A stretch of DNA of 63,811 nt, counting the filler, from Ministeria vibrans ATCC 50519 (Eukaryota > Protista > Filasterea): NCBI GenBank assembly GCA_943704425.1. It is 5 parts of 5 records of this genome, joined end to end, with 100 filler letters (N's around TTAATTAATTAA, not from the genome) between each part and the next. Parts side by side here need not be neighbours in the genome. Positions count along the whole stretch, not along the records: positions 1 to 28,833 come from CALSCP010000159.1; 4 more parts are not named here. One strand, written 5' to 3'. The notes beneath the pieces were generated by a model that worked only from the letters and a program-made list of their open reading frames with translations, made no database searches and was not told the origin of the DNA. Position numbers and translations under genes: made by a program. Of this stretch, positions 1 through 28,833 are shown piece after piece. Numbering within the stretch: position 1 is the stretch's first letter; every line of letters begins with the position of its first letter.

Positions 1-1
1 A

Positions 2-3412: not shown

Positions 3413-3568
3413 TCCATGGGTGCTTTTTGAGTGCACATCTGGTTGTAGTTGTAATAAATAATTCCTTTTCGTAATTTTGTTTTTGTTCTTGTTTTGGAAT
3501 CGCAACACTCTATAGCCCATTCTACATTTCTACGAAGTACTACTAAGTACATTGGTCTTTTACATTAA

Positions 3569-3601
<33 letters not shown>

Positions 3602-3684
3602 TATTATTATTATTAATTAATTTATTATTATTATTACGAAAAACCATTTCTCTCCTGAATCCTGATCATCTTTAATTTCTCTTC

Positions 3685-5163
3685 ATGCGCGCCCTGATCA
3701 TCGGATTCTTTGGTGCACAACCCAAGCACCTCCGTCGCTATGCAGAGATGTACAAAACGCTGGGCTTTACGGAGACTCGCACGTTCCACTACCCCATCCT
3801 CGATGCGACGACTTGGGCCGGCTGGAGCAAGCTACGGACGCTAGAGATGGGCAAATACGACGTGGTGCACACCCTGTCTGGGGGTTGTCTTGTGGCATTC
3901 AACATGTGGATGGCGCAGAACAGTGGTCGTCTCGAGTACGTGATCACTGCGCCTCTGTGGGTTGTTCTGTTGTGTCTCTCGATGTCACCCAACCCGTCCT
4001 TTATCCTGCCTCCAATTCACTCCCTCCCGCGCGCATGATCAAGATATGCATGCACTGCACACTGTCGCACTGCCGCGCTGCGCCGATAGTGCTTCTGTGG
4101 TGTTCGTTGATGTTTGCAACGTTTATTTTTTATTTTTGGAAAGTCATCCATCTCTCTCTAGCGAAAATCCCGACCTCTCCTTGTCAATGTTGCACTTGAA
4201 TCACATGATAACGTGCGATAGTATGTTATTCTATGCATTTACACAACGAATTGTTCTCTCAATCTTTCGGGTTACATTATTTTTTGTTATCTGTTGTGAC
4301 TTCGTTGTGACTTATAAGCAAACGCGATCGAACGAATGCCACGGCCATGCCGAGCCAAGGGCCTGGCGGCACGGCATAGCTTTGTCGCACGTCCAACGAC
4401 GGCCGCTTTTGATTTGGATTTGTGTCTCGTGCGTTTTGCATTTTTATTATGATTATCGACAATTTGAATTTGAATTGTCACTCTTTTTTTCATTGCGATG
4501 CAGATACAATCGACTGATTTGTGACTCTGGGCCGATGTTTCCGACTCCCGAGAACACCTCGCACTACGTCGTTCAGCGGTTCCCCTTGGCGAAGCCCTTT
4601 GAGTCGCTTGTTGGCAGTGCGATCGGATCATACTGGAGACAAGAAGGTACGATTGATTTTGGATCTGTTTTGGATCTGCTTTGCATTGTGTCTCGGGTCT
4701 TTTGTGTTGTGAGTTCCGCACTCTGTATGGCCTATGTTTCTGTTGCTGCGACTGTCTGATTGAATGGCTGCTTCCAACGACGACGCGTAGGATACGAATG
4801 GTCCACAGAGCTGAGCAAATACGAAGAGCGAATTGTGGGCGAAAACTCACCTCCCAGACTGTTCCTCAACTCACAGGCCGATCCCATTATCCTCCTCAGC
4901 GAGATTTCAAAGCACACTGAAAAAGACGTAAGACACGGGTTACACCTTGGAACCCGAGTGACATCTTGGACGAGAATAACTTTCTCTTCGTCTTCCGTCC
5001 AATCTTACCGCAATGCCAAACACCCTAACCCCCAACTCTTCTTCTTTAGGGCGCTCGTTCCGTGACCTTTGAGTCGGGTGAGCACGTCCGTCTCCTCCAG
5101 ACACATCCTGAGCAGTATCGTCAGGAAATTGCTGATTTTTTACGTCTCACCAACACTGCCTGA
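3685..5163 (+). CDS. TMEM53/DUF829-like alpha/beta-hydrolase-fold protein (4 exons)
   Basis: Motifs 'IIGFFGAQPKHLRRYAEMY', 'VHTLSGG', 'ICDSGP', 'LFLNSQADPII' and 'FESGEHVRLLQTHPEQY'. Exons ~3685-3935, 4504-4647, 4791-4927 and 5050-5163 join in frame via GT-AG introns. Confidence 0.75.
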
Positions 5164-10603: not shown

Positions 10604-11067
10604 AGGTTAGGGTTGCTCATTTTTTTTTCTTGCCAGGTTGGGGTCAAGACCGCGGACATTCTGTGTCTAACGTCACTGGGGCACGATGATTGTGTGCCTA
10701 TCACATCACGAAAGGTGCGTCCGAAGAAGAAATTTTTTGACAAAACGAGAAATTTCGTGGTGTGTGTGTGCATGTGTTTGTCTCACTTCACTCTCTCTCT
10801 CTCTTTCTTTCTTTTCTGCGTCTCTCTATCTCTGTCTTTGTCTTTATATTGTCTGTACATGTTACTCAGGGAATGGTTGTGGATCGGCCGAGCGAGTACC
10901 GGCGGATGTCGCGTGAGTACACCATCCTGGCAGGCAGGTACGCAGGCTGGGCTTACGCATGGGCACAGCGCCATCGCATGCCCTATGCTCCGGTTCTCTT
11001 TATGTCCGAGAAGGCAGCGCACGAGGCTAACAGCGTCGCAGCGACACAGAGCCAACCAGACCACTGA
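9809..11067 (+). CDS. OGG1-like HhH-GPD DNA glycosylase-family protein with altered active site (4 exons)
   Basis: OGG_N motif 'LLSGQSLRW', 'ILRLDPAEAL', 'FPRFEDL', 'MGY', HhH 'MPGVGVKTADILCLTSLG' and C-terminal 'GRYAGWAYA'. Exons ~9809-10422, 10501-10552, 10637-10714 and 10870-11067. Confidence 0.8.
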
Positions 11068-11356
11068 CGACCAGTGCCCAGTTCGAGTGTGAAGTGCTTT
11101 TTGTTTTATTGATTTGTAGTAATAGAAGTAACGAAAACTGTGACTCTACTGTCACATTATAATTATTATAATTATTTCTCCGCTTCACAATTAGTTGCAA
11201 AAACAAAATAAGATTGAACAGCAAAGATGAGGGTGCGTGGCGGATGTTTATTCAATTATTTTATTATTGAGAGCGAGTGAGCGAATGAATTGACATTCAT
11301 GTTTAAATTTTTATAATAATTATTTTGTACTATACAAAAGTGTACTGAGAGTCGTG

Positions 11357-11616
11357 TTATAGCGACAAATGACCGGTTGCATTGAGAACGGTGAGGGTGA
11401 CAAAGAGAACGTAGAGAGCAATGAGGACAAAGCCGTAGGCTCGCGGTGGAGTCATTTTGAAGGCGGGAAAGACGATGAGAGTGGCGATGAGCGAGACGCC
11501 CAGAAAGATCCAAGCCAGCTTGACTTTGGCAAAGTTGGAGGAGTTGACGTCAAATGTGAATGATTGCGGGTAGTGGCGAGAGCACTGCAAGAATAAGAGA
11601 AAGAAAGAAAGAAAGA

Positions 11617-11704
<88 letters not shown>

Positions 11705-12245
11705 NNNNNNNNNNAAAACAAAGTGATAGAGAGAGAGAGAGAGAGAGAGAGAGGAGGAGGAGGAGGGAGAAAGAAACAAAGTGATAGAGAGAGAGAGAAA
11801 CAAAGTGATAGAGAGAGAGAGTAGAGAAATAGAAAGAGAAAAAGGAGGGAGAAAGAAAGTAATAAGAAAGAAGAGACAACGTGATAGAGAGAGGAAAAAG
11901 AAACAAGGTGAAAGAGAGAGAAATGAGGGAGAAAGAAACACCGCAATAGAGAGGAGGAAAGAAACAAAGCGATAGAGAGGGAGAAAGTAACAAAGTGCGA
12001 GAAAGGAGAAGAAAAGAGAAAGAACGAAAGAAATAAAATAGAGAGGGGCAAGTTGGAGTGAGTAAGTGTGATATGTGTCATCATACACACTCTTTCGAGT
12101 GCGTAAGTGGGATTCAAATAAAAATAATGATACCCAAGCGGTGAGGGAGATGCCAAGGCCAAGGACATCATTGAGAAGGGGACTACCAAGGCACGAGGCA
12201 ACGCCCATTGCAGGGAACCCAGCGCGAGCCACGGCCGTGTCCTAC

Positions 12246-12303
<58 letters not shown>

Positions 12304-14167
12304 ACAAATATATAGATATAGAGTGTCAAAGTCTACTAAAGACGGTATGCGTGAACTATCCTTACTGCAACCCAGTCGCCAACAGAGTTTCCCGCTGCAA
12401 GCACAGTCAGCCCAAGAATGGCCGTATCAATGCTGAAGAGCACTCCAAAGGTTTCAAGGACCGACACGAGCTCGTTGGCCTCGACATTGAGCCAGGCAAT
12501 GGCGCTGACAAAGCCCAAGAGGGCAATAAGAGGGTAGAAGCGTGGCAGAGAATGGTCGTTGGTCGTCGCATAGAGCACAAGCGAGAGCGGAACGCACACC
12601 ATCAGACACGCGGCGTAGACTGGCACTGCTCCCGCACTCGTTCCAAGCACATCAAAGCTCTATCCTCCAACAGACACAACACGCAGACACACAGACATAT
12701 ATTCTTCAGGTTTCGAACACCATAAAAACCCATCTTTTCGACGTCTTACACCCAGATTGAGACATATGAGCATGGCAAAGGGAAGCGGAGTGAGCACAGT
12801 GAAAATGCGTCTTTGGCGGTTCCACAGCCCGTCAGCAGAAGGAATGCTGAGCCAACGCATCAGGGAGAAAGGATATTCGACAACAAACTGCACTTTGGCG
12901 GGCAGTCCTTCGTCCGCGTCCCACTGCAGTCCTACGAGGCGCACTTCCTTGGTCTCCAATACACTCTCGTGCACATCAGTATCATTTGTTCTGAACAAAA
13001 TGAAGAGAAAAAAAACAAACACGGCGAAGAGAGAAAGAGAATCAAATCGACACAATCCTATACATATAGTACATATGACACATATGAGGAGAGTGAAACA
13101 GAGAGAAAGAGCACATTTAAAGACATATGAGAAAAAGGAAGACAGACGAAAAAAAAAACGCATTTAAAGTGGAAACACAATTACACATTACACAATGAAT
13201 AATACAGGATCGTACAGGAGAGGTTCAGTGTCAGTTGCATCTGCAAGCGCAACCAATTGGTCTTGCTTGAATCGCTGGTAGCGTGTGATAGTCACTACTA
13301 TCCCAATGTAGATTATGTACAGCAGAAGGAACGCGACCGATTCGTAGATGGAAATCTGCAAGAACGCATAACAATTTTTTTTCATACTCGATAGGAAGAC
13401 CATTAATTATGCTTTTGTACCTTTCCGTCGTACGAAGCGCCAATGACAAGCGCTACAACAATCATGTAGGCGATTTGATCGCGAAAAAAGTCACTGCGTT
13501 TAATGGTGCCCGCATTGACAGTGCTCAGCAAGATCACCGAGCCCAACACGACGGTTGAGATGAACATGGATGCGCCCAGAAGAGCGCCTAATTCCAAAGG
13601 GAAGTCGTCGGCCTTTTGTAGTGCCGAGTATGCTGCAAAAACGTCGGGTGCGCCGTTCCCCAGTGCAAGCAGCGTGATTCCAGCGACACTATGTACAAGC
13701 CGCAATGTTGACATGGGACTTTTTCTTTTGGCTGACGCTTACGCTGGCGAGAGCTTGAGCTGTTCGCTTAGTAACTGGAGTGGCGGGACAAAGTAGGTGT
13801 CGGCTGTGCTGGCGAGAAGCGAGATGAGCAGGAGAAGCCAGAGGAGGAGGACGATGTAGGCGAAGGGTTTGGCGTCGCTGAGGTCGCAGTACACCAGCGC
13901 AAGGTAGTTGAACAGCTGCATTGGGACCTCGTCGCAGAAGTGCGTGACAAAGTAGCACTTGTCGACGACCTGCTTGTCGTGCACCGACGAGCAGTTTCCC
14001 GAAGCGCTATCGAGAAGGTGGCGCGTTGGAAGGCGCGCCACATCGCTTGTGAACAGTTCATCGCGCCATTCGTCTTGTCTTGTCGGAGACCCTCGAAATA
14101 AGGCAACAAGGCCCGCCGCGACAAGGACACATGTCAAGCGAGCTCCCAATCGACCACGGGCGGTCAT
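11357..14167 (-). CDS. Cation/Ca2+ exchanger of the CCX/NCLX (SLC8B1-like) family (multi-exon)
   Basis: Alpha-1 repeat 'VAGITLLALGNGAPDVF' and alpha-2 repeat 'LGLTVLAAGNSVGDWVA', plus 'ARAGFPAMGVASCLGSPLLN'. N-terminal Cys-rich 'CYFVTHFC...FNYLALVYC' segment. Confidence 0.92.
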
Positions 14168-14441: not shown

Positions 14442-14912
14442 ATGTTGAGCAGAGCACGCTGCCTCGTCCGGCCGGTTGTCGTGCAGTCGTTGAGGCTGCG
14501 ACAACCGCCTCCCCAACTGCCTCGCACCAATCGCCACGCGTCGTCCTCCGCCTCAACGCCTCCCTCCGACTCGTCCTCTTCCGACTCGTCCTCCTCCGCC
14601 TCCTCCGCCTCCTCCGCCTCCTTCGCCTCGGCGCCGCCCAGCAAGCTGTTCATCTCTCTCACGTGCAACGTGTGCAACGCGACCATCTCCAAGCTGATCA
14701 ACAAACGCACATACGAGACGGGCTCCGTGTTGGTGCGCTGCGACGGGTGCGCCAAGCTGCATGTGCTCGCCGACAACCACAATCTCTTTGACTACGGCGG
14801 CAAAAACATTGAGCAGATCATGGAGGAGAAGAACGAGTCGGTTCGGCGTGAGGCGACTCCAGACGAGCTACAAGCACTCACACGCGCGTTGGACAACTCG
14901 AAGAAATCCTGA
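14442..14912 (+). CDS. DNLZ: Mitochondrial DNL-type zinc finger protein (Hep1/Zim17)
   Basis: Arg-rich presequence, then 'TCNVC...YETGSVLVRCDGCAKLHVLADNHNLF...NIEQIM'. Confidence 0.9.
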   Translation: MLSRARCLVRPVVVQSLRLRQPPPQLPRTNRHASSSASTPPSDSSSSDSSSSASSASSASFASAPPSKLFISLTCNVCNATISKLINKRTYETGSVLVRCDGCAKLHVLADNHNLFDYGGKNIEQIMEEKNESVRREATPDELQALTRALDNSKKS

Positions 14913-15640
14913 CACGCCCAAGAAAAGTGCCAACGACGCGTCCTCGGCTTAGGATCCGTCGAGTGTAAGACATGGGTGAAAAGTGGACGGATGGACTCGG
15001 GACCAGCCTGTGTTGGTGTCAGTGTCACTCTTGTACAAAATGAAACGGAATTTGTGTTGACGAAAGCAAAACTCAGCTCATTGTTGCAGTGATTTGCGGC
15101 TTGCTCAGCCCTGGGTACTTCATTTTGGTGCAATGGTGGCTTCATACTTTCGTGCGTGGTGAGTGGTGACAGAATTTCTCACCTACGTCTGACGTCACGA
15201 ATCAAACCAATCTCCAAATTTCCTTTTCCGATGATCGATCGGCACAACCACGCTAATACCGCGCACTATGCAATTCGCTGCAGTCCTGTGGTCACAATAA
15301 GTCACCACTCACCACTCTCTCCTGATTCGTGATCCCAATCCCACGTTCTTCTCAACTCTTTTGTCGATGGATGAGCCACAAACCTCGCTCGATCGGACGT
15401 TCTGCCGAACAATGTGAGACTCCGGGCCATTAACAACACACATGATACTATGGCGTTACAACTCACAGGGCGGTCACTCAGTCACTCACCATTTTACCAA
15501 TAGCCAAAAGTTCGCACACGACTCACGTTCGATCGATAATCGGAATTCAAAAATCAAAACACTTCAGACTTTTTTTTCTTTTCTTTTTTTCATTGAACTT
15601 TTTTTTTCTTTCAATTCTTCGCTTATCTTCAATCTCTTCA

Positions 15641-18600
15641 ATGAAGCTTGTTTTGCTGGCTTCTCTCGCGCTTGTGTGCGTCTGTCTCGCTGAGCAGATG
15701 CCCGAGCCCGAACGCGAGCCTGCAAACGCCCTGGACCTTCTCAGCGACGGTCCGCTTGCCCATTATACTGACGTCACGCGACCCGCTCGCTCACCCCAAA
15801 ACCTCTCTTGCAGACGAACTCTTCGGCCTGGACGAGGTCCATTTCGCCAGGGACAACGTCCAGCTTGACATTGATACACGTAGCCACGGCGTGTGCTCCA
15901 GGTACGCTTGGTGTTCGCTTGAGTATGCAATTGACGTATGTCGTTAGACTTTTTTTTTTTTTTTGAATTTGCATCGTTTCCCCGCGCACCCTCATGCGGC
16001 TTTGCATCACTCCTGCCATTGCTCGCTAGCCCATTGTTGGTCCATTAGACACCTTCTAGCCTGCTTAGATTCGCAATTGGCGCGTTGTTTTGCGACAGAA
16101 TTCCATTTTTGATTCAGTGACGACAGCTTGATCGGAACTAAAACGAGAGACGACAAACATCTGAAAAGAGTCACATTCCTCAGTCAACGCCATCCCATTC
16201 TATCGACACACACTCTCTCATATTACTCCCTACCGCCGTATGCCGTTTCGCCTACCGCTCGTGACACACCAACGTTGACCGTTTTTTCTTTGTCTTCTTC
16301 TAATTGTTCGTCTCATCTCGCCACTTATTTTTTTTTCTTTTTTTTTCCTCCTTTTTTTATAGTAACCCATGTCAGCAAGGAGGCACATGTAACAGCTACA
16401 CGGCGAGCTCGCGTCGTCGTCGCCGCACCTCGTACAACTACTTTGCTTGCTCATGTCTCTCCGGCACGTACGGAACACGCTGTCAGAGTGGCTCCACCGG
16501 CGCCTGCTCCTCCAACCCTTGTCAACACAACTCCAACTGTATTGACGCCGTCAACAACGGCTTCTCCTGTCAGTGTAGCTCTGTGTACGCCGGAAAGACG
16601 TGCAACGTTGTCAAAGCATGCGTCTCCAATCCGTGTCGCAACGGTGGCGATTGTGTCGACTCCGTCTCCACCGCCTCCAATCCCGTCGACATTGTCCTTG
16701 TCCTCGACAACAGTGGTAGCATGTCTTCGTCGTCCATCTCGTCGCTCAAAACGGCTGTCAAATCTTTGGTACATCAGAAACACGATTAATGTAATATTCT
16801 AACACGTCTTTCTTTGATTAGGTGAATTCGCTGAGCTCAAATGATCGCGTCGCCATCTATGCGTTTGGCAGCTCGAGTGGCTCAACCGGAGGCCAGACGA
16901 CGACGATTCCCAAGCGATTCCTTGCTTTTACTACCATTGGCGCCTACGACAGCTACTACTCGACGGGTCGTGGCCGTGTGCTCCATTACCTGGACAACGT
17001 TGTCTTCTCCACCCTACACTGGACTCCTCTTTACGACACCATCTTCTCTGCGATTGAGTACGGTGTGTCGTCGTCGCGCGACACTGCCAGTCCCATTGTC
17101 ATTGCCATGACAGACGGTTCTGACACCTCTTCGTCGGTGAACCATTACGCAAACAATGACGCCAATGAGTTTCCCGACGGTGACTCGGCCGGCCGCATTG
17201 GTAACAACGACTATAACAATCGCGACGACTACGGCTCCGCCTACCGCGGAAGCGACAATATCGATGGTGGTATTTGTAACTCACCCATCCCCGTGTACAC
17301 CGTCGGCCTGGGCATTGGCTCGTCCGATGCCAACAAGCTGCGCGAGGTCGCCCTCACCTCGCCCGGCGGTCAGTACTACGGTGCCGCCAGCAGTAGCGAT
17401 CTCATTGGTGTCTACTCGTCCATTTCCGACTCGGTTGCCGTCTCTTTCACATGTAACTGTCGCTCCGGCTACACCGGCGTCAACTGCGAGACAGCCGTCA
17501 ACCACTGTGACTCGAACCCATGCCGCAATGGTGGTACCTGCCACAACACTGCCTCCGGCTACGCCTGCACCTGCCCCTTCGGCTTTGGTGGCACCCTCTG
17601 CCAGACTGTCACCAACCCTTGCTACTCGAACCCGTGTCAAAACGGTGGCACTTGCATCACCTATGGTACCAGCTTCTACTGCAACTGTCCCACCGGTCGC
17701 ACCGGCAACCTTTGCCAGACCATCATCAACAACTGCGCTTCGAACCCGTGCGCCAACCAGGGCACGTGCGTCTCCACTGCAAACGGCTACACCTGCTCGT
17801 GCCGCACCTTCTACACTGGCGAACGCTGCACCGTCACCAAAGCTTGCCTTTCCAACCCGTGTCGCAACGGTGGCACCTGTGCTGACGTCGTGTCGACCAC
17901 GCCCGGTAGTAGCTCGCTTATCGACCTTGTTTTCATGCTGGACAACAGCGGTAGCATGACCAATACGGACGTGAGCGCCCTCAAGAGTGCTGTCATTGCA
18001 ACCGTCAACGGCCTGAAGGACACCGACCGCGTTGCCATTTTCAGCTTCTATGGCCTCCAGGGACAAATCAATGGCAACGCCAACGAGTGGGGTCCCAAGC
18101 TCTTCTTGGGTTTCACCACCCTGGGTGCGTACGACTCGTCGTATGGCACTGGCCGTGGCCGTGTTATCCACTACGTCAACAATATCATCTTCCAGTACGA
18201 CCACTGGACGCCGCTGTGGGACACGCTCTTCGACTCGATCAAGTATGCTATCACATACAGGCGCTCCGACGCGCGCGCCGTCGTTGTCGGTATGACCGAT
18301 GGCGAGGACACCTCAAGCGGTACCAACAACTACGGCAACGATGACTCCATCGAGTTCCCCGATGGCGACTCCAACGGACGCCTTGGCAACAACGACTACA
18401 ACACCTTGGATGACTACGGCTCCGCCTACCGCGGTTCCGATCAGATCGACGGTGGCCTCTGCAACGCTCCCATTGCCGTGTACACCGTCGGCCTGGACGT
18501 TAGCTCGTCGAACGCCAACAAGCTCCGCGAGGTCGCCCTCACATCCGACGGCGGTCAGTACTTTAGCGCTGTCTCCAACAACCAACTCTCGGCCGTGTAC

Positions 18601-21600
18601 CAAAGCATCGCCGACAGTGTCTCGGTCACGTACGAGTGCTCATGTCCCGCCGGCTACACCGGGGACGACTGCCAGACGCTCATCAACCCGTGTGGTTCGA
18701 ACCCCTGTCGCAACGGCGGTGTCTGCTCCCAGAGCGGCACCGGCTACACCTGCACCTGCACCTGCGGCTACGACGGCGTCACCTGCGCTTCGGTCAAGAA
18801 CGAGTGCTCCTCCAACCCGTGCGAGAACGGCGGCACCTGCTCTGACGGCACATGCTCTTTTTCTTGTGCTTGCCGTGCCGGTTATACCGGCGCGCGCTGC
18901 CAAACCAACATCAACGAGTGCGCGTCGAACCCTTGCCAGAATGGTGGTACCTGCACCGATTATGTCAACGCATACGCGTGTTCGTGCCGTTGCGGCTACT
19001 CCGGCCCGCAATGCCAGTGGAACAACAACGAGTGCTCGTCAAACCCTTGCAAGAATGGCGGTACATGCAACGACGGTATTTGCAGCTACACCTGCAGCTG
19101 CCGACCCGGCTACTATGGCGACCGTTGCGAGACCAACATCAACGAGTGCGCCTCGAATCCGTGCAAGAACGGCGGCACTTGTCACGACGGCGTTAACGGT
19201 TACACTTGCTCCTGCAAGTGTGGCTACGAGGGAGCGACGTGCGCCACCAACACGAACGAGTGTGCCTCGAACCCGTGTCTCAACGGTGGCACCTGCTCCG
19301 ACAACGTCTGTGGCTACACCTGCGGCTGCAAGACGGGCTACTCGGGCGATCAATGTCAGTTGAACAACAACGAGTGCGCGTCGAACCCCTGCAAGAATGG
19401 TGGCACTTGTGTCGATGGCATTGCCAGCTACATCTGCAAATGCCGATGTGGTTGGGCCGGAAGCCTGTGTGAATCAGCTGTCAACGAGTGCGCGTCGAAT
19501 CCGTGCCAGAATGGCGCAACTTGCAACGACGGTGTCTGCGGCTACACCTGCACTTGTCCGCCCGGCTTCTACGGCACCTACTGCCAAGCAAACACAAACG
19601 AGTGCGCATCAAACCCCTGCCGCAACGGTGGCACCTGTACCGACCTCGTCAATGGCTACACCTGCTCATGCCCCTGCGGTTACGAGGGTGTCACGTGTGC
19701 CACGAACACAAACGAATGTGCTTCGAACCCCTGCCTCAATGGTGGCACCTGTAACGACCGCGTGTGCGGCCACACGTGTACGTGCATGCCCGGGTACACC
19801 GGCAACCGTTGCGAGACCAATGTGAACGAGTGCTCCTCGAACCCGTGCCGCAACGGCGGAGTCTGTATCGACAGTGTCAATGGCTTCTCCTGCTCGTGTC
19901 CGTGCGGCTGGACCGGCTCGCTGTGCCACTCGCAAATCGACGAGTGTGCCTCTAACCCGTGCCGCAACGGCGCTACCTGCCTTGATCGCACCTGTGGGTT
20001 CAGCTGCAAATGCGCCCCCGGCTACTACGGCTCGCGCTGCCAGGCTGACATCAACGAGTGTGCCTCGAATCCGTGCCAGAACAGCGGTACGTGCCACAAC
20101 CTTGTCAATAGCTTTGCGTGCTCGTGTCGATGCGGCTACGAGGGTGTCACTTGCGGCACCAACGTGAACGAGTGTTCGTCTAACCCGTGCGCTAACGGTG
20201 GCACTTGCAACGACGCCATCTGCGGCTACTCGTGCACCTGCCCCCCCGGCTTCACGGGCCCTGAGTGCAAGACCAATGTGAACGAGTGCGCCTCCAACCC
20301 GTGTGCCAACGGCGGAACTTGCCACGACGGTGTCAACGGCTACACGTGCTCGTGCAAGTGCGGCTGGATGGGCACGCGCTGCACCGTCAACGTCAACGAG
20401 TGTGCTTCGAACCCGTGCCAAAACGGTGCAACCTGCAACGACGCCACTTGTGGCTACACTTGCACCTGTGCTCCTGGCTACTTTGGTACACACTGTCAGA
20501 CTAATGTGAACGAGTGTGCGTCGAATCCGTGCCGGAACGGCGGTACTTGCACCGATCATATCAATGGCTACACCTGTGCCTGCAAGTGCGGCTACGAGGG
20601 CGCTAACTGCGCCACGGAGACGAACGAGTGCGCTTCCGGCCCGTGCCACAACGGTGGTACTTGCTCCGACAGTGTGTGTGGCTACTCTTGCGGCTGCAAG
20701 GCCGGCTACACCGGCACTCATTGCGAGACCAACATCAACGAGTGCGCCTCGAACCCGTGCCAGAATGGCGGTGTGTGCGACGACCGTGTCAACGGCTACT
20801 CTTGCTCGTGTGCCTGCGGCTGGACCGGCACCCAATGTACTTCCAACATCAACGAGTGCGCGAGCAACCCGTGCCAGAACGGTGCCACCTGTAATGATGC
20901 CACTTGCGGTTACACTTGCACTTGTGCGCCTGGCTACTTTGGCACCAAGTGTGACTCGGATGTGAACGAGTGTCTCTCGAACCCATGCCAGAACGGTGGT
21001 ACCTGTACGGACCGTGTCAACGGCTACACATGCGCCTGCAAGTGCGGCTACGAAGGCGCCACGTGCGCGACCAACACCAACGAGTGCGCGTCGGCTCCTT
21101 GCCAGAATGGCGGCACTTGCAGTGACTCGGTCTGCGGCTACTCGTGTGGTTGCAAGGCCGGCTACACCGGCACCCACTGTGAGACTAACATCAACGAGTG
21201 CGCCAGTAACCCGTGCCGCAACCAGGCGACTTGTGTCGATGGAATCAACAGATACACATGCCTGTGCAAGTGTGGTTGGACCGGAACCCATTGCGACAGT
21301 AACATCAACGAGTGCGCCTCGAACCCGTGTCGCAACGGCGCTACTTGTGTCGACAGCACCTGCGGTTACTCTTGCCAGTGCGCGCCCGGTTACTTTGGCA
21401 CACACTGCGACTCCAATGTGAACGAATGCAGCTCAAACCCCTGCCAGAATGGCGGTACCTGTACCGACGGCATCAACGGCTACACCTGCTCGTGCGCTTG
21501 CGGATGGGAGGGCACTCACTGTGCGTCGAACACCAACGAGTGCGGATCGAACCCATGCCAGAACGGCGGCACTTGCTCGGATGGCGTGTGTGGCTACGCT

Positions 21601-24600
21601 TGCTCGTGCAAGGCGGGCTACACTGGCACCCACTGCGAGACGAACGTCAATGAGTGTGCGTCAAACCCGTGTCGCAACGGCGCTACCTGCGTCGACGGTG
21701 TCAACGGTTACTCCTGCTCATGTGCCTGCGGATGGAATGGTGTTCACTGCCAGACGAACATCAACGAGTGCTCGTCGAACCCGTGCAAGAACGGCGCCAC
21801 TTGCAACGACGCCACTTGTGGCTACACTTGCACTTGTGCACCGGGCTACTTTGGCACACATTGTGACTCGAACGTCAACGAGTGCGCCTCCAACCCTTGT
21901 CTCAACCAAGGCACCTGCCACGATGGCATTAACGGTTTCACCTGCTCTTGCAAGTGCGGCTGGGAAGGTGCTACGTGCGCCACCAACACCAACGAGTGTG
22001 CGTCGAACCCGTGCCAGAACGGCGGAGCTTGCAGCGACTCGGTCTGCGGCTACTCTTGCTCGTGTGACGCCGGCTACACCGGCACGCACTGCGAGACGAA
22101 CGTCAACGAGTGCGCCTCAAACCCGTGTGTCAACGGCGACTGTGTTGATGGCGTGAATGGCTACACTTGCAACTGCGAGTGCGGCTGGAACGGCGTGCAT
22201 TGCCAGACGAACATCAACGAGTGCTCGTCGAACCCGTGCAAGAACGGCGCCACCTGTAATGATGCCACGTGCGGTTACACGTGCACCTGTGCGCCGGGCT
22301 ACTTTGGCACGCATTGCGACTCGAACATCAACGAATGCGATTCGAGTCCCTGCAAGTTTGGCGGTACCTGTCACGACGGCATTGACAGCTTCACGTGTAC
22401 CTGTGCTTGCGGTTATGAAGGTGCCACGTGCGCCACCAACACCAACGAGTGTGCGTCGAACCCGTGCCAGAATGGTGCTACATGCAGCGATGAGGTGTGC
22501 GGCTACTCGTGCGTCTGCAAGAGTGGTTTTGTGGGTACCCATTGTCAGACGAACGTCAACGAGTGTTCTTCAAACCCTTGCCGCAATGGCGCCACTTGTG
22601 TTGATGGTGTCAATGGCTACACATGTACCTGTGCTTGCGGCTGGTACGGCGCTTTGTGCCAGTACAACACCAACGAATGTGCGAGCAACCCTTGCAATAA
22701 TGGTGCGACATGTAACGATCAGACATGTGGCTACACGTGCACTTGTGCACCTGGCTACTTTGGCACCCACTGCGACTCGAACACCAACGAGTGCGCGTCG
22801 AATCCTTGCCAGAATGACGGCACTTGTCACGATGGTATTAACATGTACACTTGCTCATGCAAGTGCGGCTTCGAAGGCGTCAACTGCGCCACCAACACTA
22901 ACGAGTGCGGATCGAACCCGTGCCAGAACGGTGGCACTTGCGCAGATGGTGTGTGCGGCTACGCTTGCTCGTGCAAGCCTGGCTACACTGGCACCCACTG
23001 TGAGACAAACGTGAATGAGTGCGCGTCGAACCCGTGCCGCAACGGGGCTACCTGCGTCGACGGTGTTAACAGTTACTCCTGCTCTTGCGCCTGCGGCTGG
23101 TACGGTGCTCTTTGTCAGCACAACACCAACGAGTGCGCCTCGAACCCGTGCCAGAACGGTGCCACCTGCAATGATGGAACGTGTGGTTACACTTGCACTT
23201 GTGCTCCTGGCTATTTTGGCGCTCTGTGCGACTCGAACACGAACGAGTGTGACTCGAACCCGTGCCAGAACGGCGGTACATGTCACGACGGAATCAACGG
23301 CTACACTTGCAGCTGTGCTTGCGGCTATGAAGGTGCAAACTGTGCCACCAACACCAACGAGTGCGGTAGCAACCCGTGCCAGAACGGCGGGTCTTGCTCT
23401 GATGGCGTGTGTGGTTACACATGTGGCTGCAAGGCAGGTTACACCGGAACCCACTGCGAGACGAACGTGAACGAGTGCGCCTCAAACCCGTGTCAGCATG
23501 GCGCCACCTGTGTTGATGCTGTTAATAGCTACTCGTGCACCTGCGCCTGTGGCTGGACTGGTGTTTACTGCCAGACGAACATCAACGAGTGCGCCAGCAA
23601 TCCTTGCCAGAACGGCGCTCGTTGTGACGATGCCACGTGTGGCTTCACTTGCAAGTGTGCCCCGGGATACTTTGGCACACTGTGTGACTCGGAGACGGAC
23701 GAGTGTGCCAGCAACCCTTGTCAGAATGGTGGCACTTGCCACGATTCGGTCAACGGTTACTCTTGTGAGTGCGCTTGTGGCTGGGAGGGCACGCATTGTG
23801 CGTCCAACACCAACGAATGCGCTTCGAACCCGTGCCAGAACAACGGCGTGTGCAGCGACAGCGTCTGCGGCTACACTTGCAGCTGTGCCAACGGTTACGC
23901 AGGAGACGACTGTGAGACCAACATCAACGAGTGCGCGAGCAACCCGTGCCAGAACGGCGCGACGTGTAACGATCAGGTCAACGGCTACGAGTGCGCCTGC
24001 ACCTGTGGCTGGTCTGGCACTCACTGTTCGGTCAACATCAACGAGTGCGGCTCGAATCCTTGCCAGAACGGCGCCACATGCCACGACGCGACGTGTGGCT
24101 ACACTTGCACGTGCGCTCCGGGTTTCTTCGGCACCTTGTGCGATTCGGATGTAAACGAGTGTCTCTCAAACCCGTGTCAGAACGGCGGTACTTGCAGTGA
24201 TCTTGTCAACGGCTACACCTGTTCGTGCGCCTGCGGATGGGAGGGCACTCACTGTGCGTCGAACACCAACGAGTGCGGATCGAACCCATGCCAGAACGGC
24301 GGCACTTGCTCGGATGGCGTGTGTGGCTACGCTTGCTCGTGCAAGGCGGGCTACACTGGCACCCACTGCGAGACGAACGTCAATGAGTGTGCGTCAAACC
24401 CGTGTCGCAACGGCGCTACCTGCGTCGACGGTGTCAACGGTTACTCCTGCTCATGTGCCTGCGGATGGAATGGTGTTCACTGTCAGACGAACATCAACGA
24501 GTGCTCGTCGAACCCGTGCCAGAACGGCGCCACTTGCAACGACGCCACTTGTGGCTACACTTGCACTTGTGCTCCTGGTTACTTTGGTACCCACTGCGAC

Positions 24601-27600
24601 TCGAACATCGATGAATGCGACTCCAACCCATGTGCCAACGGAGGTACTTGCACTGACGGCATCAACGGCTTTACCTGCTCGTGTGCTTGCGGATGGGAAG
24701 GCACAACCTGCGCTACCAACACCAACGAGTGTGCGTCGAACCCGTGCCAGAACGGCGGAGCTTGCAGCGACTCGGTCTGCGGCTACTCATGCTCGTGTGA
24801 CGCCGGCTACACCGGCACGCACTGCGAGACGAACGTCAACGAGTGCGCGAGCAACCCGTGTCGCAACGGCGCGACGTGCGTTGATGGCGTCAACAGCTAC
24901 GTGTGTGACTGTGCGTGCGGATGGAATGGTGTTCACTGCCAGACGAACATCAACGAGTGCTCGTCGAACCCGTGCCAGAACGGCGCCACTTGCAACGACG
25001 CCACTTGTGGCTACACGTGCACTTGTGCACCGGGCTACTTTGGCACACATTGCGACTCGAACGTCAACGAGTGTGACTCCAACCCTTGCCAGAACGATGG
25101 AACATGCACTGATGGCATCAATGGATACACATGTGCTTGTACCTGTGGATGGGAAGGTGCTAATTGCGCTTCGAACACCAACGAGTGCGGATCAAACCCA
25201 TGCAAGAATGGCGGAAGTTGTACCGACAACACGTGCGGCTACATCTGCTCGTGTTCGCCCGGCTATACCGGAACACACTGCGAGACAAACATCAACGAGT
25301 GCGCCTCGAACCCCTGCCAGAACGGGGCGACGTGCTCCGACTTGGTCAATGGCTTCGAGTGTTCTTGCGCTTGCGGATGGGCCGGCACTCTGTGCTCTTC
25401 AAACATCAACGAATGTGGCTCGAACCCTTGCCAGAACGGTGCTACTTGCAACGACGCGACCTGCGGTTACACTTGCACTTGTGCTCCGGGTTACTTTGGC
25501 ACCCATTGCGACTCGGATGTGAACGAGTGTCTCTCGAACCCGTGTCAGAACGGCGGTACTTGCAGTGATCTTGTCAACGGCTACTCCTGTTCGTGCGCCT
25601 GCGGATGGGAGGGCACTCACTGTGCGTCGAACACCAACGAGTGTGGATCGAACCCCTGCCAGAACGGCGGTACTTGCTCGGATGGCGTGTGTGGCTACGC
25701 TTGCTCGTGCAAGGCGGGCTACACTGGCACCCACTGCGAGACGAACGTCAATGAGTGTGCGTCAAACCCGTGCGTCAACGGTGACTGTGTTGATGGCGTT
25801 AACGGCTACACTTGCTCGTGCGAGTGCGGTTGGTACGGCGCGCATTGTCAGCACAACACGAACGAGTGTGCTTCGAACCCGTGTCAGAACGGTGCCACTT
25901 GCAACGACGCCACTTGTGGCTACACTTGCACTTGTGCTCCTGGTTACTTTGGTACCCACTGCGACTCGAATATCGATGAATGCTTCTCGAATCCGTGTGC
26001 AAACGGAGGCACTTGTACTGACGGCGTCAACGGCTTTACCTGCTCGTGCGCTTGCGGATGGGAAGGCACAACCTGCGCTACCAACACCAACGAGTGTGCG
26101 TCGAACCCGTGCCAAAACGGCGGAGCTTGCAGCGACTCGGTCTGCGGCTACTCATGCTCGTGTGACGCCGGCTACACCGGCACGCACTGCGAGACGAACG
26201 TCAACGAGTGCGCGAGCAACCCGTGTCGCAACGGCGCGACGTGCGTTGATGGCGTCAACAGCTACGTGTGTGACTGTGCGTGCGGATGGAATGGTGTTCA
26301 CTGCCAGACGAACATCAACGAGTGCTCGTCGAACCCGTGCCAGAACGGCGCCACTTGCAACGACGCCACTTGTGGCTACACGTGCACTTGTGCACCGGGC
26401 TACTTTGGCACACATTGCGACTCGAACGTCAACGAGTGCGCCTCCAACCCTTGTCTCAACCAAGGCACCTGCCACGATGGCATTAACGGTTTCACCTGCT
26501 CTTGCAAGTGCGGCTGGGAAGGTGCTACGTGCGCCACCAACACCAACGAGTGTGCGTCGAACCCGTGCCAGAACGGCGGAGCTTGCAGCGACTCGGTGTG
26601 CGGCTACTCATGCTCATGCAATGCCGGCTACACCGGCACGCACTGCGAGACGAATGTCAACGAGTGTGCTTCAAACCCGTGTGTCAACGGTGACTGTGTT
26701 GATGGCGTGAATGGCTACACTTGCAACTGCGAGTGCGGCTGGAACGGCGTGCATTGCCAGACGAACATCAACGAGTGCTCGTCGAACCCGTGCAAGAACG
26801 GCGCCACCTGTAATGATGCGACGTGCGGCTACACGTGCACCTGTGCGCCTGGCTACTTTGGCACACATTGCGACTCGAACGTCAACGAGTGCGCCTCCAA
26901 CCCTTGTCTCAACCAAGGCACCTGCCACGATGGCATTAACGGTTTCACCTGCTCATGCAAGTGCGGCTGGGAAGGCGCTACGTGCGCCACCAACACCAAC
27001 GAGTGTGCGTCGAACCCATGCCAGAATGGCGGCGCTTGCAGCGACTCGGTGTGCGGCTACTCATGCTCATGCAATGCCGGCTACACCGGCACGCACTGCG
27101 AGACGAACGTCAACGAGTGTGCGTCAAACCCGTGTGTCAACGGCGCTTGTGTCGATGGCGTCAACGGCTACACATGTAACTGTGAGTGCGGCTGGGCCGG
27201 TGTCCACTGCACCACAAACATTGATGAGTGCGCTAGCAACCCGTGCCAGAATCTTGGCACGTGTGTGGATGGTACCTGCGGTTTTACTTGTACTTGCCGA
27301 CCGGGCTACTACGGCACCGTATGTGACTCGGATGTCAACGAGTGTGTCTCTAACCCCTGTCAGAATGATGGAACTTGCAACGATCTCGTCAATGGCTACA
27401 CGTGCAATTGTGCATGCGGCTGGGAGGGAACTAACTGTGCCACCAACACCAACGAGTGTGCGTCGAACCCGTGCCAGAACGGCGGAGCTTGCAGCGACTC
27501 GGTCTGCGGCTACTCATGCTCGTGTGACGCCGGCTACACCGGCACGCACTGCGAGACGAACGTCAACGAGTGTGCCTCAAACCCGTGTGTCAACGGTGAC

Positions 27601-28833
27601 TGTGTTGATGGCGTGAATGGCTACACTTGCAACTGCGAGTGCGGCTGGAACGGCGTGCATTGCCAGACGAACATCAACGAGTGCTCGTCGAACCCGTGCA
27701 AGAACGGCGCCACCTGTAATGATGCCACGTGCGGCTACACGTGCACCTGTGCGCCGGGCTACTTTGGCACGCATTGTGACTCGAACGTCAACGAGTGCGC
27801 CTCGAACCCTTGCCAAAATGCTGGAACCTGCACTGATGGCGTTAACGGTTACAGTTGCTCTTGCGCCTGTGGCTGGGAGGGAACACACTGCGCTACGAAC
27901 ACCAACGAGTGTGCTTCAAACCCGTGCCAGAACGGCGGCGCTTGCAGCGACTCGGTCTGCGGCTACTCTTGCTCATGCAATGCCGGCTACACCGGCACGC
28001 ACTGCGAGACGAACGTCAACGAGTGTGCCTCAAACCCGTGTGTCAACGGTGACTGTGTTGATGGCGTGAATGGCTACACTTGCAACTGCGAGTGCGGCTG
28101 GAACGGCGTGCATTGCCAGACGAACATCAACGAGTGCTCGTCAAACCCGTGCCAGAACGGCGCCACCTGCCACGATGCCACGTGCGGCTACACTTGCGCT
28201 TGCGCTCCTGGCTACTTTGGCACTCATTGTGACTCGGACACGAATGAGTGTGAGTCGAACCCGTGCCAGAACAGCGGAACTTGCACCGACTTGGTCAACG
28301 GATACGAGTGTGCTTGTGCCTGTGGATGGGAGGGTGCCACGTGCTCCACCAACACCAACGAGTGTGCTTCGAACCCGTGCCAGAATGGCGGTGCTTGCAG
28401 CGACTCGGTCTGCGGCTACACTTGCTCATGCAACGCCGGATACACCGGCACACACTGTGAGACGAACGTCAACGAGTGTGCGTCAAACCCGTGTGTCAAC
28501 GGCGCTTGTGTCGATGGCGTCAACGGTTACACATGTAACTGTGAGTGCGGCTGGGCCGGTGTTCACTGCGCGACGAACGTTGATGAGTGCGCTAGCAACC
28601 CTTGCAAGAACGGCGCAACCTGTGTCGACGCTACTTGCGGCTACTCGTGCACCTGTGCCAATGGCTACTTTGGCACCGACTGTGGCTCTGACTACAACGA
28701 GTGCGACTCAAACCCGTGCCAGAACGCAGGAACGTGCACTGATATGGTCAATGGGTACTCTTGCGCGTGCGCGTGCGGCTGGGAAGGAACCAACTGTGCC
28801 TCGAACACCAACGAGTGTGCTTCGGCTCCTTGC
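15641..28833 (+). CDS. Giant secreted EGF-repeat protein (>4200 aa, roughly 95-100 EGF domains) with two inserted VWA domains; 3'-truncated by gap
   Basis: Signal peptide 'MKLVLLASLALVCVCLA'. Exons 15641-15749, 15814-15901, 16363-16768 and 16822 onward splice in frame. Two VWA domains carry MIDAS 'DNSGSM', 'TPL' and 'MTDG'. Long array of Notch-like 38-aa 'NINECxSNPCxNGxTC' repeats. Confidence 0.95.
18684..28833 (+). repeat. Coding tandem array: 114-bp EGF units grouped into 456-bp (or 453-bp) four-EGF higher-order repeats
   Basis: Matching DNA blocks recur at offsets of 453, 1365, 2733 and 4554 bp, for example 21508/24241 and 21868/26422/26875. Confidence 0.9.

What the first reader, a model, noticed from the sequence alone, without database searches (positions are those of the whole stretch)
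18684..28833. ~89-EGF rod with strictly alternating extra cysteines: candidate inter-domain disulfide staples
Seen: every EGF in the array has 7 Cys. Odd domains carry the extra Cys two residues after C5 (C-x-C-x-C-G-[WYF], e.g. 'YTCSCKCGYEG'). The next domain carries it in the C3-C4 hairpin turn ('CSDSVCGYSC', 'CNDATCGYTC'). I saw no break in the alternation over ~10 kb. Known: in Notch and fibrillin cbEGF pairs, the aromatic residue of the C5-x-x-G-Ar loop of domain n packs on the hairpin turn of domain n+1, which is where these two extra Cys lie. Inference: each EGF pair is covalently locked into a rigid bi-domain unit, giving a very long stiffened filament. Alternatively, the extra Cys cross-link neighbouring chains into an extracellular matrix, stalk or theca.
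Basis: partly seen in the sequence, partly recalled or inferred. Interest (0 to 1): 0.85.

Follow-up and report, generated by a model that had tools for sequence, protein, structure and literature searches.

The report
Disulfide-stapled EGF couples in giant stalk
A marine protist expresses a giant secreted protein whose 89 calcium-binding EGF domains each carry a seventh cysteine, placed so that every other domain junction is most likely locked by an extra disulfide; this way of stiffening an EGF rod turned up in no paper I searched.

Summary
From window 18691 to 28815 there are 89 complete EGF units of 37 or 38 aa, all with 7 Cys. They alternate strictly between type A (extra Cys two residues after C5) and type B (extra Cys five residues after C3, in the hairpin turn).

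The gene is real. RNA contigs show three GT..AG introns, a signal peptide, and two VWA domains nested inside EGF hairpins ahead of the array.

- In 12 paralogous contigs, all 57 A sites are followed by a B and all 57 B sites are preceded by an A. Isolated "oABo" couples are common, and there is no lone site and no B-first run.
- A rotifer protein has an independent A, A+B, B and A, B series that obeys the same rule.
- The AlphaFold model superposes on Notch1 EGF11-13 at 1.5 Å.
- In about 5,900 ordinary six-Cys EGF pairs, these two positions are the top co-varying inter-domain pair. Controls at other offsets are negative.

The SG-SG distance could not be measured because no coordinates are exposed.

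The couple is absent from about 12,000 other foreign EGF domains and from the papers searched. I rate it a new variant of a known kind.

The parts
15641..15748 (+). Exon 1, coding part: start codon and signal peptide (MKLVLLASLALVCVCLA). RNA contigs begin near 15600.
   Evidence: RNA contigs from X17, X13 and X8 cover 15600-15748 and join to 15813. The frame is open from the ATG at 15641.
15749..15812 (+). Intron 1 (64 nt, GT..AG)
   Evidence: joints table: skipped in three RNA-type runs, colinear in the DNA run X2.
15813..15899 (+). Exon 2 (short acidic N-terminal segment)
   Evidence: pieces table; frame check.
15900..16360 (+). Intron 2 (461 nt)
   Evidence: the same RNA contigs go from 15899 to 16361. 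One search shows GT at the 5' end and a pyrimidine tract followed by AG at the 3' end.
16361..16767 (+). Exon 3: two six-Cys EGFs (the first carries an RRRRR insert), then the N-half of a split EGF (16619-16654) and the start of VWA1 with the MIDAS motif D-N-S-G-S (16703-16723)
16768..16820 (+). Intron 3 (53 nt, GT..AG)
   Evidence: joints table: three RNA-type runs, side 255.
16821..28833 (+). Exon 4: one uninterrupted open frame of about 12 kb, cut by the contig end
16821..17487 (+). Rest of VWA1 and the C-half (C4-x-C5...C6) of the EGF that hosts it (17446-17487)
   Evidence: 59% identical to VWA2.
17506..17844 (+). Three ordinary six-Cys EGF domains
17845..18672 (+). An EGF split by a nested VWA2. 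C1-C3 lie at 17845-17889, MIDAS D-N-S-G-S at 17938-17958, and C4-C6 at 18631-18672.
   Evidence: PF00092 VWA, E 1.9e-10, 41.7 bits against a cut-off of 23.8, residues 368-592..
18691..28815 (+). 89 seven-Cys calcium-binding EGF domains in strict A/B alternation (45 A, 44 B). A = extra Cys at C5+2. B = extra Cys at C3+5.
   Evidence: Pfam EGF E 2.8e-47 and EGF_CA 34.7 bits against a cut-off of 27.
28816..28833 (+). First six residues (C1..C2) of the 90th EGF, expected to be type B, cut off by the contig end
   Evidence: One search shows that contig C159 ends here.

Best explanation
This is the large exon of an expressed, spliced gene of a marine protist (30 Mb assembly).

The product has a signal peptide, a head with two metal-site (MIDAS) VWA domains each nested in the hairpin of an EGF, and then a stalk of at least 89 Notch-type calcium-binding EGF domains, roughly 0.3 µm long if extended.

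The stalk is built from two-domain couples. In the first domain (A), a seventh Cys sits two residues after C5, next to the Gly-aromatic packing motif. In the second domain (B), a seventh Cys sits at the tip of the major hairpin, the position that packs on that aromatic residue. The two most likely form an intramolecular disulfide across the A-to-B junction, in addition to the calcium site and the aromatic packing. Every second junction would then be covalently locked, and the B-to-A junctions would remain ordinary calcium-stabilised cbEGF junctions.

Inferred consequence: a chain of rigid links about 6.5 nm long, in which the load path bypasses the C5-C6 loop, the linker and the calcium site of the stapled junction. 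This would give stiffness and integrity that do not depend on calcium occupancy.

Shown: the sequence pattern, expression and splicing, the syntax rule, and the contact propensity of the two sites. Inferred: the disulfide itself, the rigidity, and membrane anchoring through a C-terminal part that may lie on contig C324.
For: 1. Parity. Every domain has 7 Cys with all six canonical ones present, so one Cys per domain must pair outside its domain or stay free.

2. Syntax. In 12 other contigs of the same genome there are 57 A sites and 57 B sites among about 700 six-Cys EGFs. Every A is followed directly by a B and every B is preceded by an A. Counts are o->A 16 and B->o 16, with no case of o->B, A->o, AA or BB. 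Runs are AB (8), ABAB (3), ABABAB (3) and longer. The only apparent exceptions are two domains cut by an N gap. This fixes the direction as A(n) to B(n+1).

3. Independent case. The Brachionus calyciflorus protein P0031 has the series A, (A+B), B and then A, B, in non-calcium-binding EGFs. That gives six extra Cys, which the rule pairs completely.

4. Geometry. The AlphaFold2 model of an ABAB segment has pLDDT 91.4. It superposes on the Notch1 EGF11-13 crystal structures at rmsd 1.5-1.9 Å over 116-120 columns. [quoted passage not shown] By position the B site corresponds to that Gly, and the A site is two residues before the aromatic.

5. Covariation. In 5,864 unique ordinary six-Cys adjacent EGF pairs, A-site(n) with B-site(n+1) is the top body-to-body column pair. 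This holds in each of three independent subsets at the 80%-identity weighting. In the small own-genome subset it drops to rank 5 of 650 at 60% weighting. Controls at offsets +2, +3, -1 and -2 rank 76 to 311. The next pairs, (26,14), (26,17) and (26,16), recover the known interface.

6. The stapled interface is specialised. The aromatic residue is Trp in 78% of A domains here and 52% in paralogs, against 6% in six-Cys domains and 0% in B domains.

7. The gene is expressed and spliced.
Against: No coordinates are exposed by the structure tool, so the SG-SG distance was not measured, and there is no chemical evidence for the bond.

The couple could in principle travel together simply because the duplication unit is 228 or 456 nt. 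That does not explain why all 19 paralog runs (apart from the ends lost in the C324 N gap) begin with A and end with B.

The copy number rests on a repeat-rich assembly that contains identical units.

The C-terminal end of the protein is missing, so anchoring and total length are not known.
Confidence: 0.75

Rival explanations
1. The extra Cys make disulfides between chains, either between neighbouring copies or with other matrix proteins. This would weave the stalks into a covalent coat, stalk or theca, in the way teneurin EGF2 and EGF5 dimerise through odd Cys.
For: An odd Cys count per domain is how teneurins and some matrix proteins make inter-chain bonds. Pfam gives sub-threshold and marginal hits to the teneurin EGF model (PF25024: 54.7 and 79.9 bits against a cut-off of 65). 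The protein is secreted and very long.
Against: Inter-chain bonding does not require an A to be followed immediately by a B in the same chain. Yet 57 of 57 paralog A sites and 57 of 57 B sites obey this, including eight isolated single couples. Both sites lie in the known intramolecular n/n+1 interface and are the top co-varying contact pair. Teneurin-type domains lack a canonical Cys, whereas here all six are kept.
Confidence: 0.13
2. The extra Cys are unpaired or otherwise modified thiols (redox-active, metal-binding or acylated), with no structural staple.
For: Nothing measured here shows the bond directly.
Against: Ninety free thiols in a secreted, oxidatively folded protein would be unusual and prone to scrambling. 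The strict pairing syntax, and the rotifer domain that carries both sites between an A and a B, are what a pairwise bond predicts and not what independent thiols predict.
Confidence: 0.05
3. The A/B alternation is only a by-product of amplifying a two-domain or four-domain DNA cassette, or of assembly artefacts in a repeat. It would then carry no selected function.
For: TRF periods of 228 and 456 nt, several identical units, and a 323-nt exact repeat.
Against: Units of the same type are only 68-72% identical in DNA on average, yet all 89 extra Cys codons are kept. Paralogs on other contigs carry isolated couples among six-Cys EGFs, always in the same phase. RNA contigs cover the start of the array. 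An unrelated rotifer protein follows the same rule.
Confidence: 0.04

Closest known systems
Notch-type calcium-binding EGF tandems (human Notch1 EGF11-13; PDB 2VJ3, 4CUD)
   Same: The six-Cys core, the N-x-N-E-C / C-x-D-x4-[YF]-x-C calcium consensus, a six-residue C6-C1 linker, and a Gly-aromatic motif that packs on the next hairpin. The model superposes at 1.5-1.9 Å. C1-x-S-x-P-C2 and T-before-C3 glycosylation-type motifs are present in nearly every unit.
   Different: There is a seventh Cys in every domain, at the two sides of every second interface. There are 89 or more uninterrupted cbEGFs. The context is not that of a Notch receptor: there are no LNR or ankyrin parts in the window, and the head is made of VWA domains.
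Fibrillin / LTBP cbEGF arrays
   Same: Long runs of cbEGF form calcium-stiffened extracellular rods, and the interface uses the same aromatic-on-hairpin packing.
   Different: Fibrillins use a one-residue-shorter linker and intersperse TB and hybrid domains. Their extra Cys lie in hybrid and TB modules and do not alternate in EGFs. No TB or hybrid domains occur here.
Teneurin EGF repeats (EGF2 and EGF5 with odd Cys)
   Same: EGF domains with an odd number of Cys are used for an extra covalent bond outside the domain. There are weak Pfam EGF_TEN hits.
   Different: From my own knowledge of the family, teneurin domains lose a canonical Cys and bond to a second chain. Here all six canonical Cys are kept, and the syntax points to a bond to the next domain of the same chain.
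Integrin beta I-EGF and laminin-type EGF (eight-Cys EGF variants)
   Same: These are EGF folds stiffened by a fourth disulfide in tandem rods.
   Different: Their extra disulfide lies within one domain (from my own knowledge of these families). Here each domain has only one extra Cys, so the bond must leave the domain.
Giant EGF fibres: Drosophila Dumpy, octopus octovafibrin (PMC10336842)
   Same: Very long tandem EGF proteins with a mechanical or tethering role. Octovafibrin shows that EGF disulfides set stiffness and toughness.
   Different: Octovafibrin EGFs have the usual six Cys and are not calcium-binding. Dumpy alternates EGF with DPY modules (own knowledge). Neither is reported to have Cys pairs across EGF-EGF junctions.
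Brachionus calyciflorus uncharacterised EGF protein (P0031, 4265 aa)
   Same: The only foreign protein found with the same two sites in the same order: A, A+B, B and then A, B.
   Different: It has only five such domains in an array of about 50. Their linkers are not calcium-binding, one domain carries both sites (eight Cys), and the function is unknown. An independent origin is likely.

Membership tests
Calcium-binding EGF (cbEGF; Pfam EGF / EGF_CA / hEGF) | Six Cys with spacing C1-x4-C2-x4/5-C3-x8-C4-x-C5-x8-C6 | tested here: met
   All 89 units keep the six canonical Cys. PF00008 E 2.8e-47 on eight units.
Calcium-binding EGF (cbEGF; Pfam EGF / EGF_CA / hEGF) | Calcium consensus: [DN]-x-[DN]-[EQ] before C1, [DN] at C3+2, [YF] at C3+7 | tested here: met
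   Column counts: N at column 35 in 77 of 89, N/D at column 37 in 89 of 89, E at column 38 in 89 of 89, D at column 14 in 87 of 89 (N in one more), Y/F at column 19 in 88 of 89. EGF_CA scores 34.7 bits against a cut-off of 27. Calcium binding itself was not measured.
Calcium-binding EGF (cbEGF; Pfam EGF / EGF_CA / hEGF) | Rod-like tandem geometry with the aromatic at C5+4 packing on the next major hairpin | tested here: met
   The AF2 model (pLDDT 91.4) superposes on Notch1 EGF11-13 at rmsd 1.5-1.9 Å. An aromatic residue is present in 89 of 89 units. This is a prediction only.
Inter-domain stapled EGF couple (the proposal) | The extra Cys at C5+2 of domain n always co-occurs with an extra Cys at C3+5 of domain n+1 | tested here: met
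   44 of 44 complete couples here. 57 of 57 A and 57 of 57 B sites in paralogs (one of each cut by an N gap). Three couples in rotifer P0031.
Inter-domain stapled EGF couple (the proposal) | The two positions are in contact across the junction | tested here: met
   The pair is the top of 650-676 inter-domain column pairs by MI-APC in ordinary EGF tandems. It is rank 1 in each of three subsets at 80%-identity weighting, and rank 5 in the small own-genome subset at 60% weighting. Offset controls are negative. The literature interface agrees. This evidence is indirect.
Inter-domain stapled EGF couple (the proposal) | SG-SG distance about 2 Å, or Cβ-Cβ under about 5 Å, in a structure; a disulfide-linked peptide in mass spectrometry | not testable with these tools
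   Structure prediction returns no coordinates. No wet-lab data exist.
Teneurin-type inter-chain EGF | A canonical Cys is replaced so that its partner is left free for a second chain | tested here: not met
   All six canonical Cys are present in every unit. PF25024 scores 54.7 and 79.9 bits against a cut-off of 65, with partial coverage.
Laminin-type / integrin I-EGF | Eight Cys per domain forming four intradomain disulfides | tested here: not met
   There are seven Cys per domain, and no eight-Cys domain among 202 A/B domains of this genome.
VWA domain with MIDAS (head of the protein) | Pfam VWA match over its cut-off and a D-x-S-x-S motif | tested here: met
   PF00092 scores 41.7 bits against 23.8. 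D-N-S-G-S is present in both copies, and the T-D-G segment is conserved. The fold model failed (pLDDT 42).

The most novel reading that the evidence does not exclude
The A/B couple is a distinct structural module, a 'stapled bi-EGF' in which a fourth, inter-domain disulfide bridges the Gly-aromatic loop of one EGF and the hairpin tip of the next. On this reading it arose independently in a marine protist gene family and in a rotifer. It would let cells build covalently braced EGF stalks of a third of a micron, with integrity independent of calcium, and it would be a transferable design rule for stiffening any EGF tandem.
Probability: 0.55. Interest if true: 0.7.

Novelty: new variant of a known kind. 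Interest (0 to 1): 0.6.

Why it matters
EGF tandems are the rods of Notch, fibrillin and many matrix proteins. Their stiffness is thought to rest on calcium and on one aromatic contact per junction.

A natural variant that adds a covalent bond across that junction would matter in three ways:
- It would give a new, testable principle for the mechanics of EGF rods.
- It would offer a simple two-residue recipe for engineering rigid EGF pairs for structural work.
- It would show that a unicellular marine eukaryote has elaborated the "metazoan" EGF/VWA adhesion toolkit in its own way, with giant single-exon stalk proteins and domains nested in EGF hairpins.

The covariation result also gives a general sequence-only read-out of the cbEGF interface.

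Tried and rejected
**Structure**
- The AF2 model of the EGF-nested VWA2, with a three-sequence alignment, gave pLDDT 42 and is unusable. No fold search was run on it. A PDB sequence search of that segment found only EGF pieces.

**Homologue searches**
- Three homologous-protein searches (region 624-1400 of the whole protein, a 157-aa ABAB piece, and region 1-623) returned only generic animal EGF arrays at 60% identity or less. They found no A/B couples other than in rotifer P0031, and no relatives of the VWA head.
- A profile search of 1.84 billion representatives gave a top 150 that was again generic. Neither the window's own protein nor close kin were listed.
- A metagenome scan returned 80 loci with 1,247 EGF domains and no couple.
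- A blank in these capped top-hit lists does not prove the couple is absent elsewhere.

**Steps that could not be run**
- The search of earlier findings was not open.
- The organism's name is coded or withheld. I did not pursue it further.
- The joined spliced model was used only inside a script, to check the reading frame. Searches used single exons by reference.

**Rejected readings**
- B(n)-to-A(n+1) pairing: all runs start with A and end with B.
- An intradomain fourth disulfide: the Cys count per domain is odd.

**Literature**
- Searches for inter-domain disulfides between EGFs found only EGF2-protease, IB-Kazal and similar cases.
Full report
**The observation**

The + strand frame from 16822 to the end of the piece (28833) is open for 4,004 codons. 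Cutting it at the C1 motif gives 89 complete EGF units from 18691 to 28815, and six residues of a 90th unit are lost at the contig end.

Every unit has exactly seven Cys, and the types alternate without a break as (AB)x44 followed by A.
- Type A carries the extra Cys two residues after C5, directly before the Gly-aromatic motif (C-x-C-x-C*-G-W/Y/F).
- Type B carries it five residues after C3, at the tip of the major hairpin (C-x-D-x-x-C*-G-Y/F-x-C).

Both types keep the six canonical Cys and the full calcium-binding consensus. Pfam calls EGF, hEGF and EGF_CA above their cut-offs.

The DNA has nested periods of 114, 228 and 456 nt. Units of the same type are only 68-72% identical on average, so the extra Cys codons are conserved against real divergence. 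A few units are identical, and a 323-nt exact repeat exists, so the number 89 is only as good as the assembly.

**The gene**

The window is part of contig C159 of a 29.7 Mb, 2,860-contig assembly. It is eukaryotic, with GT..AG introns and BTB/pentapeptide and EGF genes.

The DNA is held by runs of one coded organism and by algal-culture, seawater and marine samples. Contigs of three RNA-type runs, one of them a poly-A library, skip 15749-15812, 15900-16360 and 16768-16820, while the DNA run is colinear.

With these joints the frame is open from an ATG at 15641 through a signal peptide. It then encodes:
- two six-Cys EGFs;
- an EGF whose C3-C4 hairpin is interrupted by a VWA domain;
- three six-Cys EGFs;
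- a second EGF-nested VWA (PF00092, 41.7 bits; D-N-S-G-S MIDAS motif in both copies);
- the seven-Cys array.

The joined model was used only for this frame check and was sent to no search tool.

The 3' end is missing. Contig C324 begins in frame inside a B-type domain. It continues with ABAB..., then six-Cys EGFs, a transmembrane helix and a tail of about 230 aa. Its first units are as similar to this array as the array's units are to each other. It is either the missing end or a very close paralog. Five paralog open frames with readable C-terminal parts (on C324, C2502, C2235, C837 and C2358) also have a hydrophobic stretch after the EGFs.

**Direction and nature of the pairing**

I built an HMM of the 38-column unit and read the two diagnostic columns in every EGF of 12 further contigs of the genome. 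Most giant arrays there are pure six-Cys.

Where extra Cys occur, the result is uniform:
- There are 57 A sites and 57 B sites among about 700 six-Cys domains.
- They always form adjacent A-then-B couples. Eight runs are single couples flanked by ordinary EGFs, and longer runs are (AB)n.
- The transitions are o->A 16, A->B 56 plus one cut by a gap, B->A 38, and B->o 16.
- o->B, A->o, AA and BB never occur. The only irregular items are two domains truncated by an N run in C324 and three partial or misaligned domains.

If run ends fell in random phase, 32 consistent ends would have a probability of about 2e-10. This excludes B(n)-A(n+1) pairing. It is hard to reconcile with independent thiols or with inter-chain bonds, which would tolerate lone sites as in teneurins.

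**Occurrence elsewhere**

Three word-indexed protein searches, one exhaustive profile search and one metagenome scan returned 438 proteins and 80 loci, together about 12,000 EGF domains.

In the 438 proteins (10,716 domains), Cys at the A site or the B site occurs in about 0.25% of domains each, and almost always alone. The 80 metagenome loci hold almost none and no couple.

The single exception is an uncharacterised Brachionus calyciflorus protein, P0031. It has five consecutive EGFs of types A, A+B, B, A, B, with non-calcium-binding linkers. Its six extra Cys are paired completely by the A(n)-B(n+1) rule. It therefore looks like an independent invention of the same staple.

**Geometry**

AlphaFold2 on an ABAB segment, with 28 in-register repeats as the alignment, gives pLDDT 91.4. 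Foldseek superposes the model on the Notch1 EGF11-13 crystal structures at 1.5-1.9 Å over three domains. The predicted junctions are therefore canonical.

The literature states that in such pairs the aromatic residue four positions after C5 of domain n packs on residues of the major beta-turn of domain n+1, a hydrophobic residue and a conserved Gly (Tyr on Ile/Gly in EGF11-12) (PMC4826273, PMC3415683). By position, the B site is that Gly and the A site lies two residues before the aromatic.

**A substitute test: covariation**

I took all ordinary six-Cys adjacent EGF pairs from the foreign proteins, the metagenome loci and this genome: 5,864 unique pairs, with an effective number of about 4,050. 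I computed MI with APC between columns of domain n and columns of domain n+1.
- A-site(n) x B-site(n+1) is the top body-to-body pair. It is followed by (26,14), (26,17) and (26,16), which recapitulate the known Gly-aromatic/hairpin interface.
- It is rank 1 in each of the three subsets taken alone at the 80%-identity weighting. At 60% weighting it stays rank 1 in the two larger subsets and drops to rank 5 of 650 in the small own-genome subset.
- Controls with domain offsets +2, +3, -1 and -2 rank it between 76 and 311.

The two positions therefore behave as contact partners across the junction in EGF tandems in general.

The stapled interface is also specialised. The packing aromatic is Trp in 78% of A domains here and 52% in paralogs, against 6% in six-Cys domains and none in B domains.

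**Mechanism, with its status**

Shown: the pattern, its conservation, its syntax, expression, and the contact propensity of the two sites.

Inferred: an intramolecular disulfide across every A-to-B junction. This would make the stalk a chain of covalently braced two-domain links joined by ordinary calcium-dependent junctions.

With about 100 Å per three EGFs, 89 domains span about 0.3 µm. The staple would shunt tensile load past the C5-C6 loop, the linker and the calcium site of the stapled junction. Why only alternate junctions are stapled here is unexplained, given that no eight-Cys domain occurs in this genome while one does in the rotifer.

The head VWA domains with MIDAS motifs suggest metal-dependent ligand binding at the distal end of a surface-anchored stalk. 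That is conjecture.

**Comparison and novelty**

The domains are bona fide Notch-type cbEGFs. The protein is not a Notch, fibrillin, teneurin, laminin-type or integrin-type EGF protein (see the membership rows). Literature searches for inter-domain disulfides between EGFs found nothing comparable. The library is limited, so this is absence of evidence only.

My verdict is a new variant of a known kind, with moderate-to-high interest for EGF structural biology and for the evolution of adhesion proteins in protists.

Noticed in passing
window 16619-17487 and 17845-18672; paralogs e.g. L015:1479-2384(-), L021:5344-6042, L021:7012-7788, L027:4262-5311: Whole domains are nested inside or between EGFs, flanked by half-EGFs (C1-C3 ... 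insert of 130-300 aa ... C4-C6). Here and on C996 the insert is VWA. In paralogs it is SPRY, ConA-like/Laminin_G_3, RCC1-like, or has no Pfam match. Nesting in the EGF hairpin seems to be a recurrent architecture in this genome.
   Followed up: partly
G000 contig C324, bases 1-4551 (L013): The open frame starts at the contig edge inside a B-type EGF. It then has ABAB..., six-Cys EGFs, a transmembrane helix and a cytoplasmic tail of about 230 aa. It is possibly the missing 3' end of this gene, which would make it a type I membrane protein of more than 5,700 aa.
   Followed up: partly
window 18691-28815, every unit; G000 C498, C372, C2228, C2085: All 89 units carry C1-x-S-x-P-C2, and 67 of 89 have Thr just before C3. 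These are the motifs known from Notch as O-glucose and O-fucose sites. The genome has matches to PF10250 (O-FucT) and PF05686 (Glyco_transf_90) above their cut-offs. Whether these enzymes act on EGFs is untested.
   Followed up: partly
window 18691-28815, column 27 of the unit: The packing aromatic residue is Trp in 35 of 45 A domains but Tyr or Phe in all B domains. Paralogs show the same bias: 52% Trp in A against 6% in six-Cys EGFs.
   Followed up: yes
P0031 (Brachionus calyciflorus), residues about 640-840: Five EGFs of types A, A+B (eight Cys), B, A, B. This is the only foreign case of the couple found. The linkers are not calcium-binding.
   Followed up: partly
G000 contigs C837, C2817, C2235, C138, C2772 and others: The 30 Mb genome holds many very long open frames made mostly of EGFs (up to 6,129 aa, and more than 100 EGFs in one frame). 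Most are six-Cys, and several end in a hydrophobic stretch. The first look gave 2,906 candidate EGF matches.
   Followed up: partly
window 16400-16430 (exon 3): The first EGF has a run of five Arg inserted in its hairpin (S-R-R-R-R-R-T). It may be a site for a proprotein-convertase-type cleavage, or just a basic loop.
   Followed up: no
window 62-3412 (+): An ORF of 1,116 aa with a BTB_2 domain followed by about 24 pentapeptide-repeat stretches (PF00805, E 1.4e-179). It is a separate upstream gene.
   Followed up: no
window 14442-14912 (+): A small gene with a DNL/Zim17-type zinc-finger motif and a presequence-like N-terminus, covered by RNA contigs. Two of the four runs carry a 15-nt insertion after 14564 in its Ser-rich stretch.
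   Followed up: no
window 11001-13000: This stretch has strongly skewed composition (GC skew 0.48, AT skew 0.40, GC 42%) and differs from its surroundings. I did not examine it.
   Followed up: no
window 24751 and 26116: There is a 323-nt exact direct repeat, and several 114-nt units are identical at distances of 12, 24 or 40 units. These are either recent segmental duplications inside the array or an assembly effect.
   Followed up: partly
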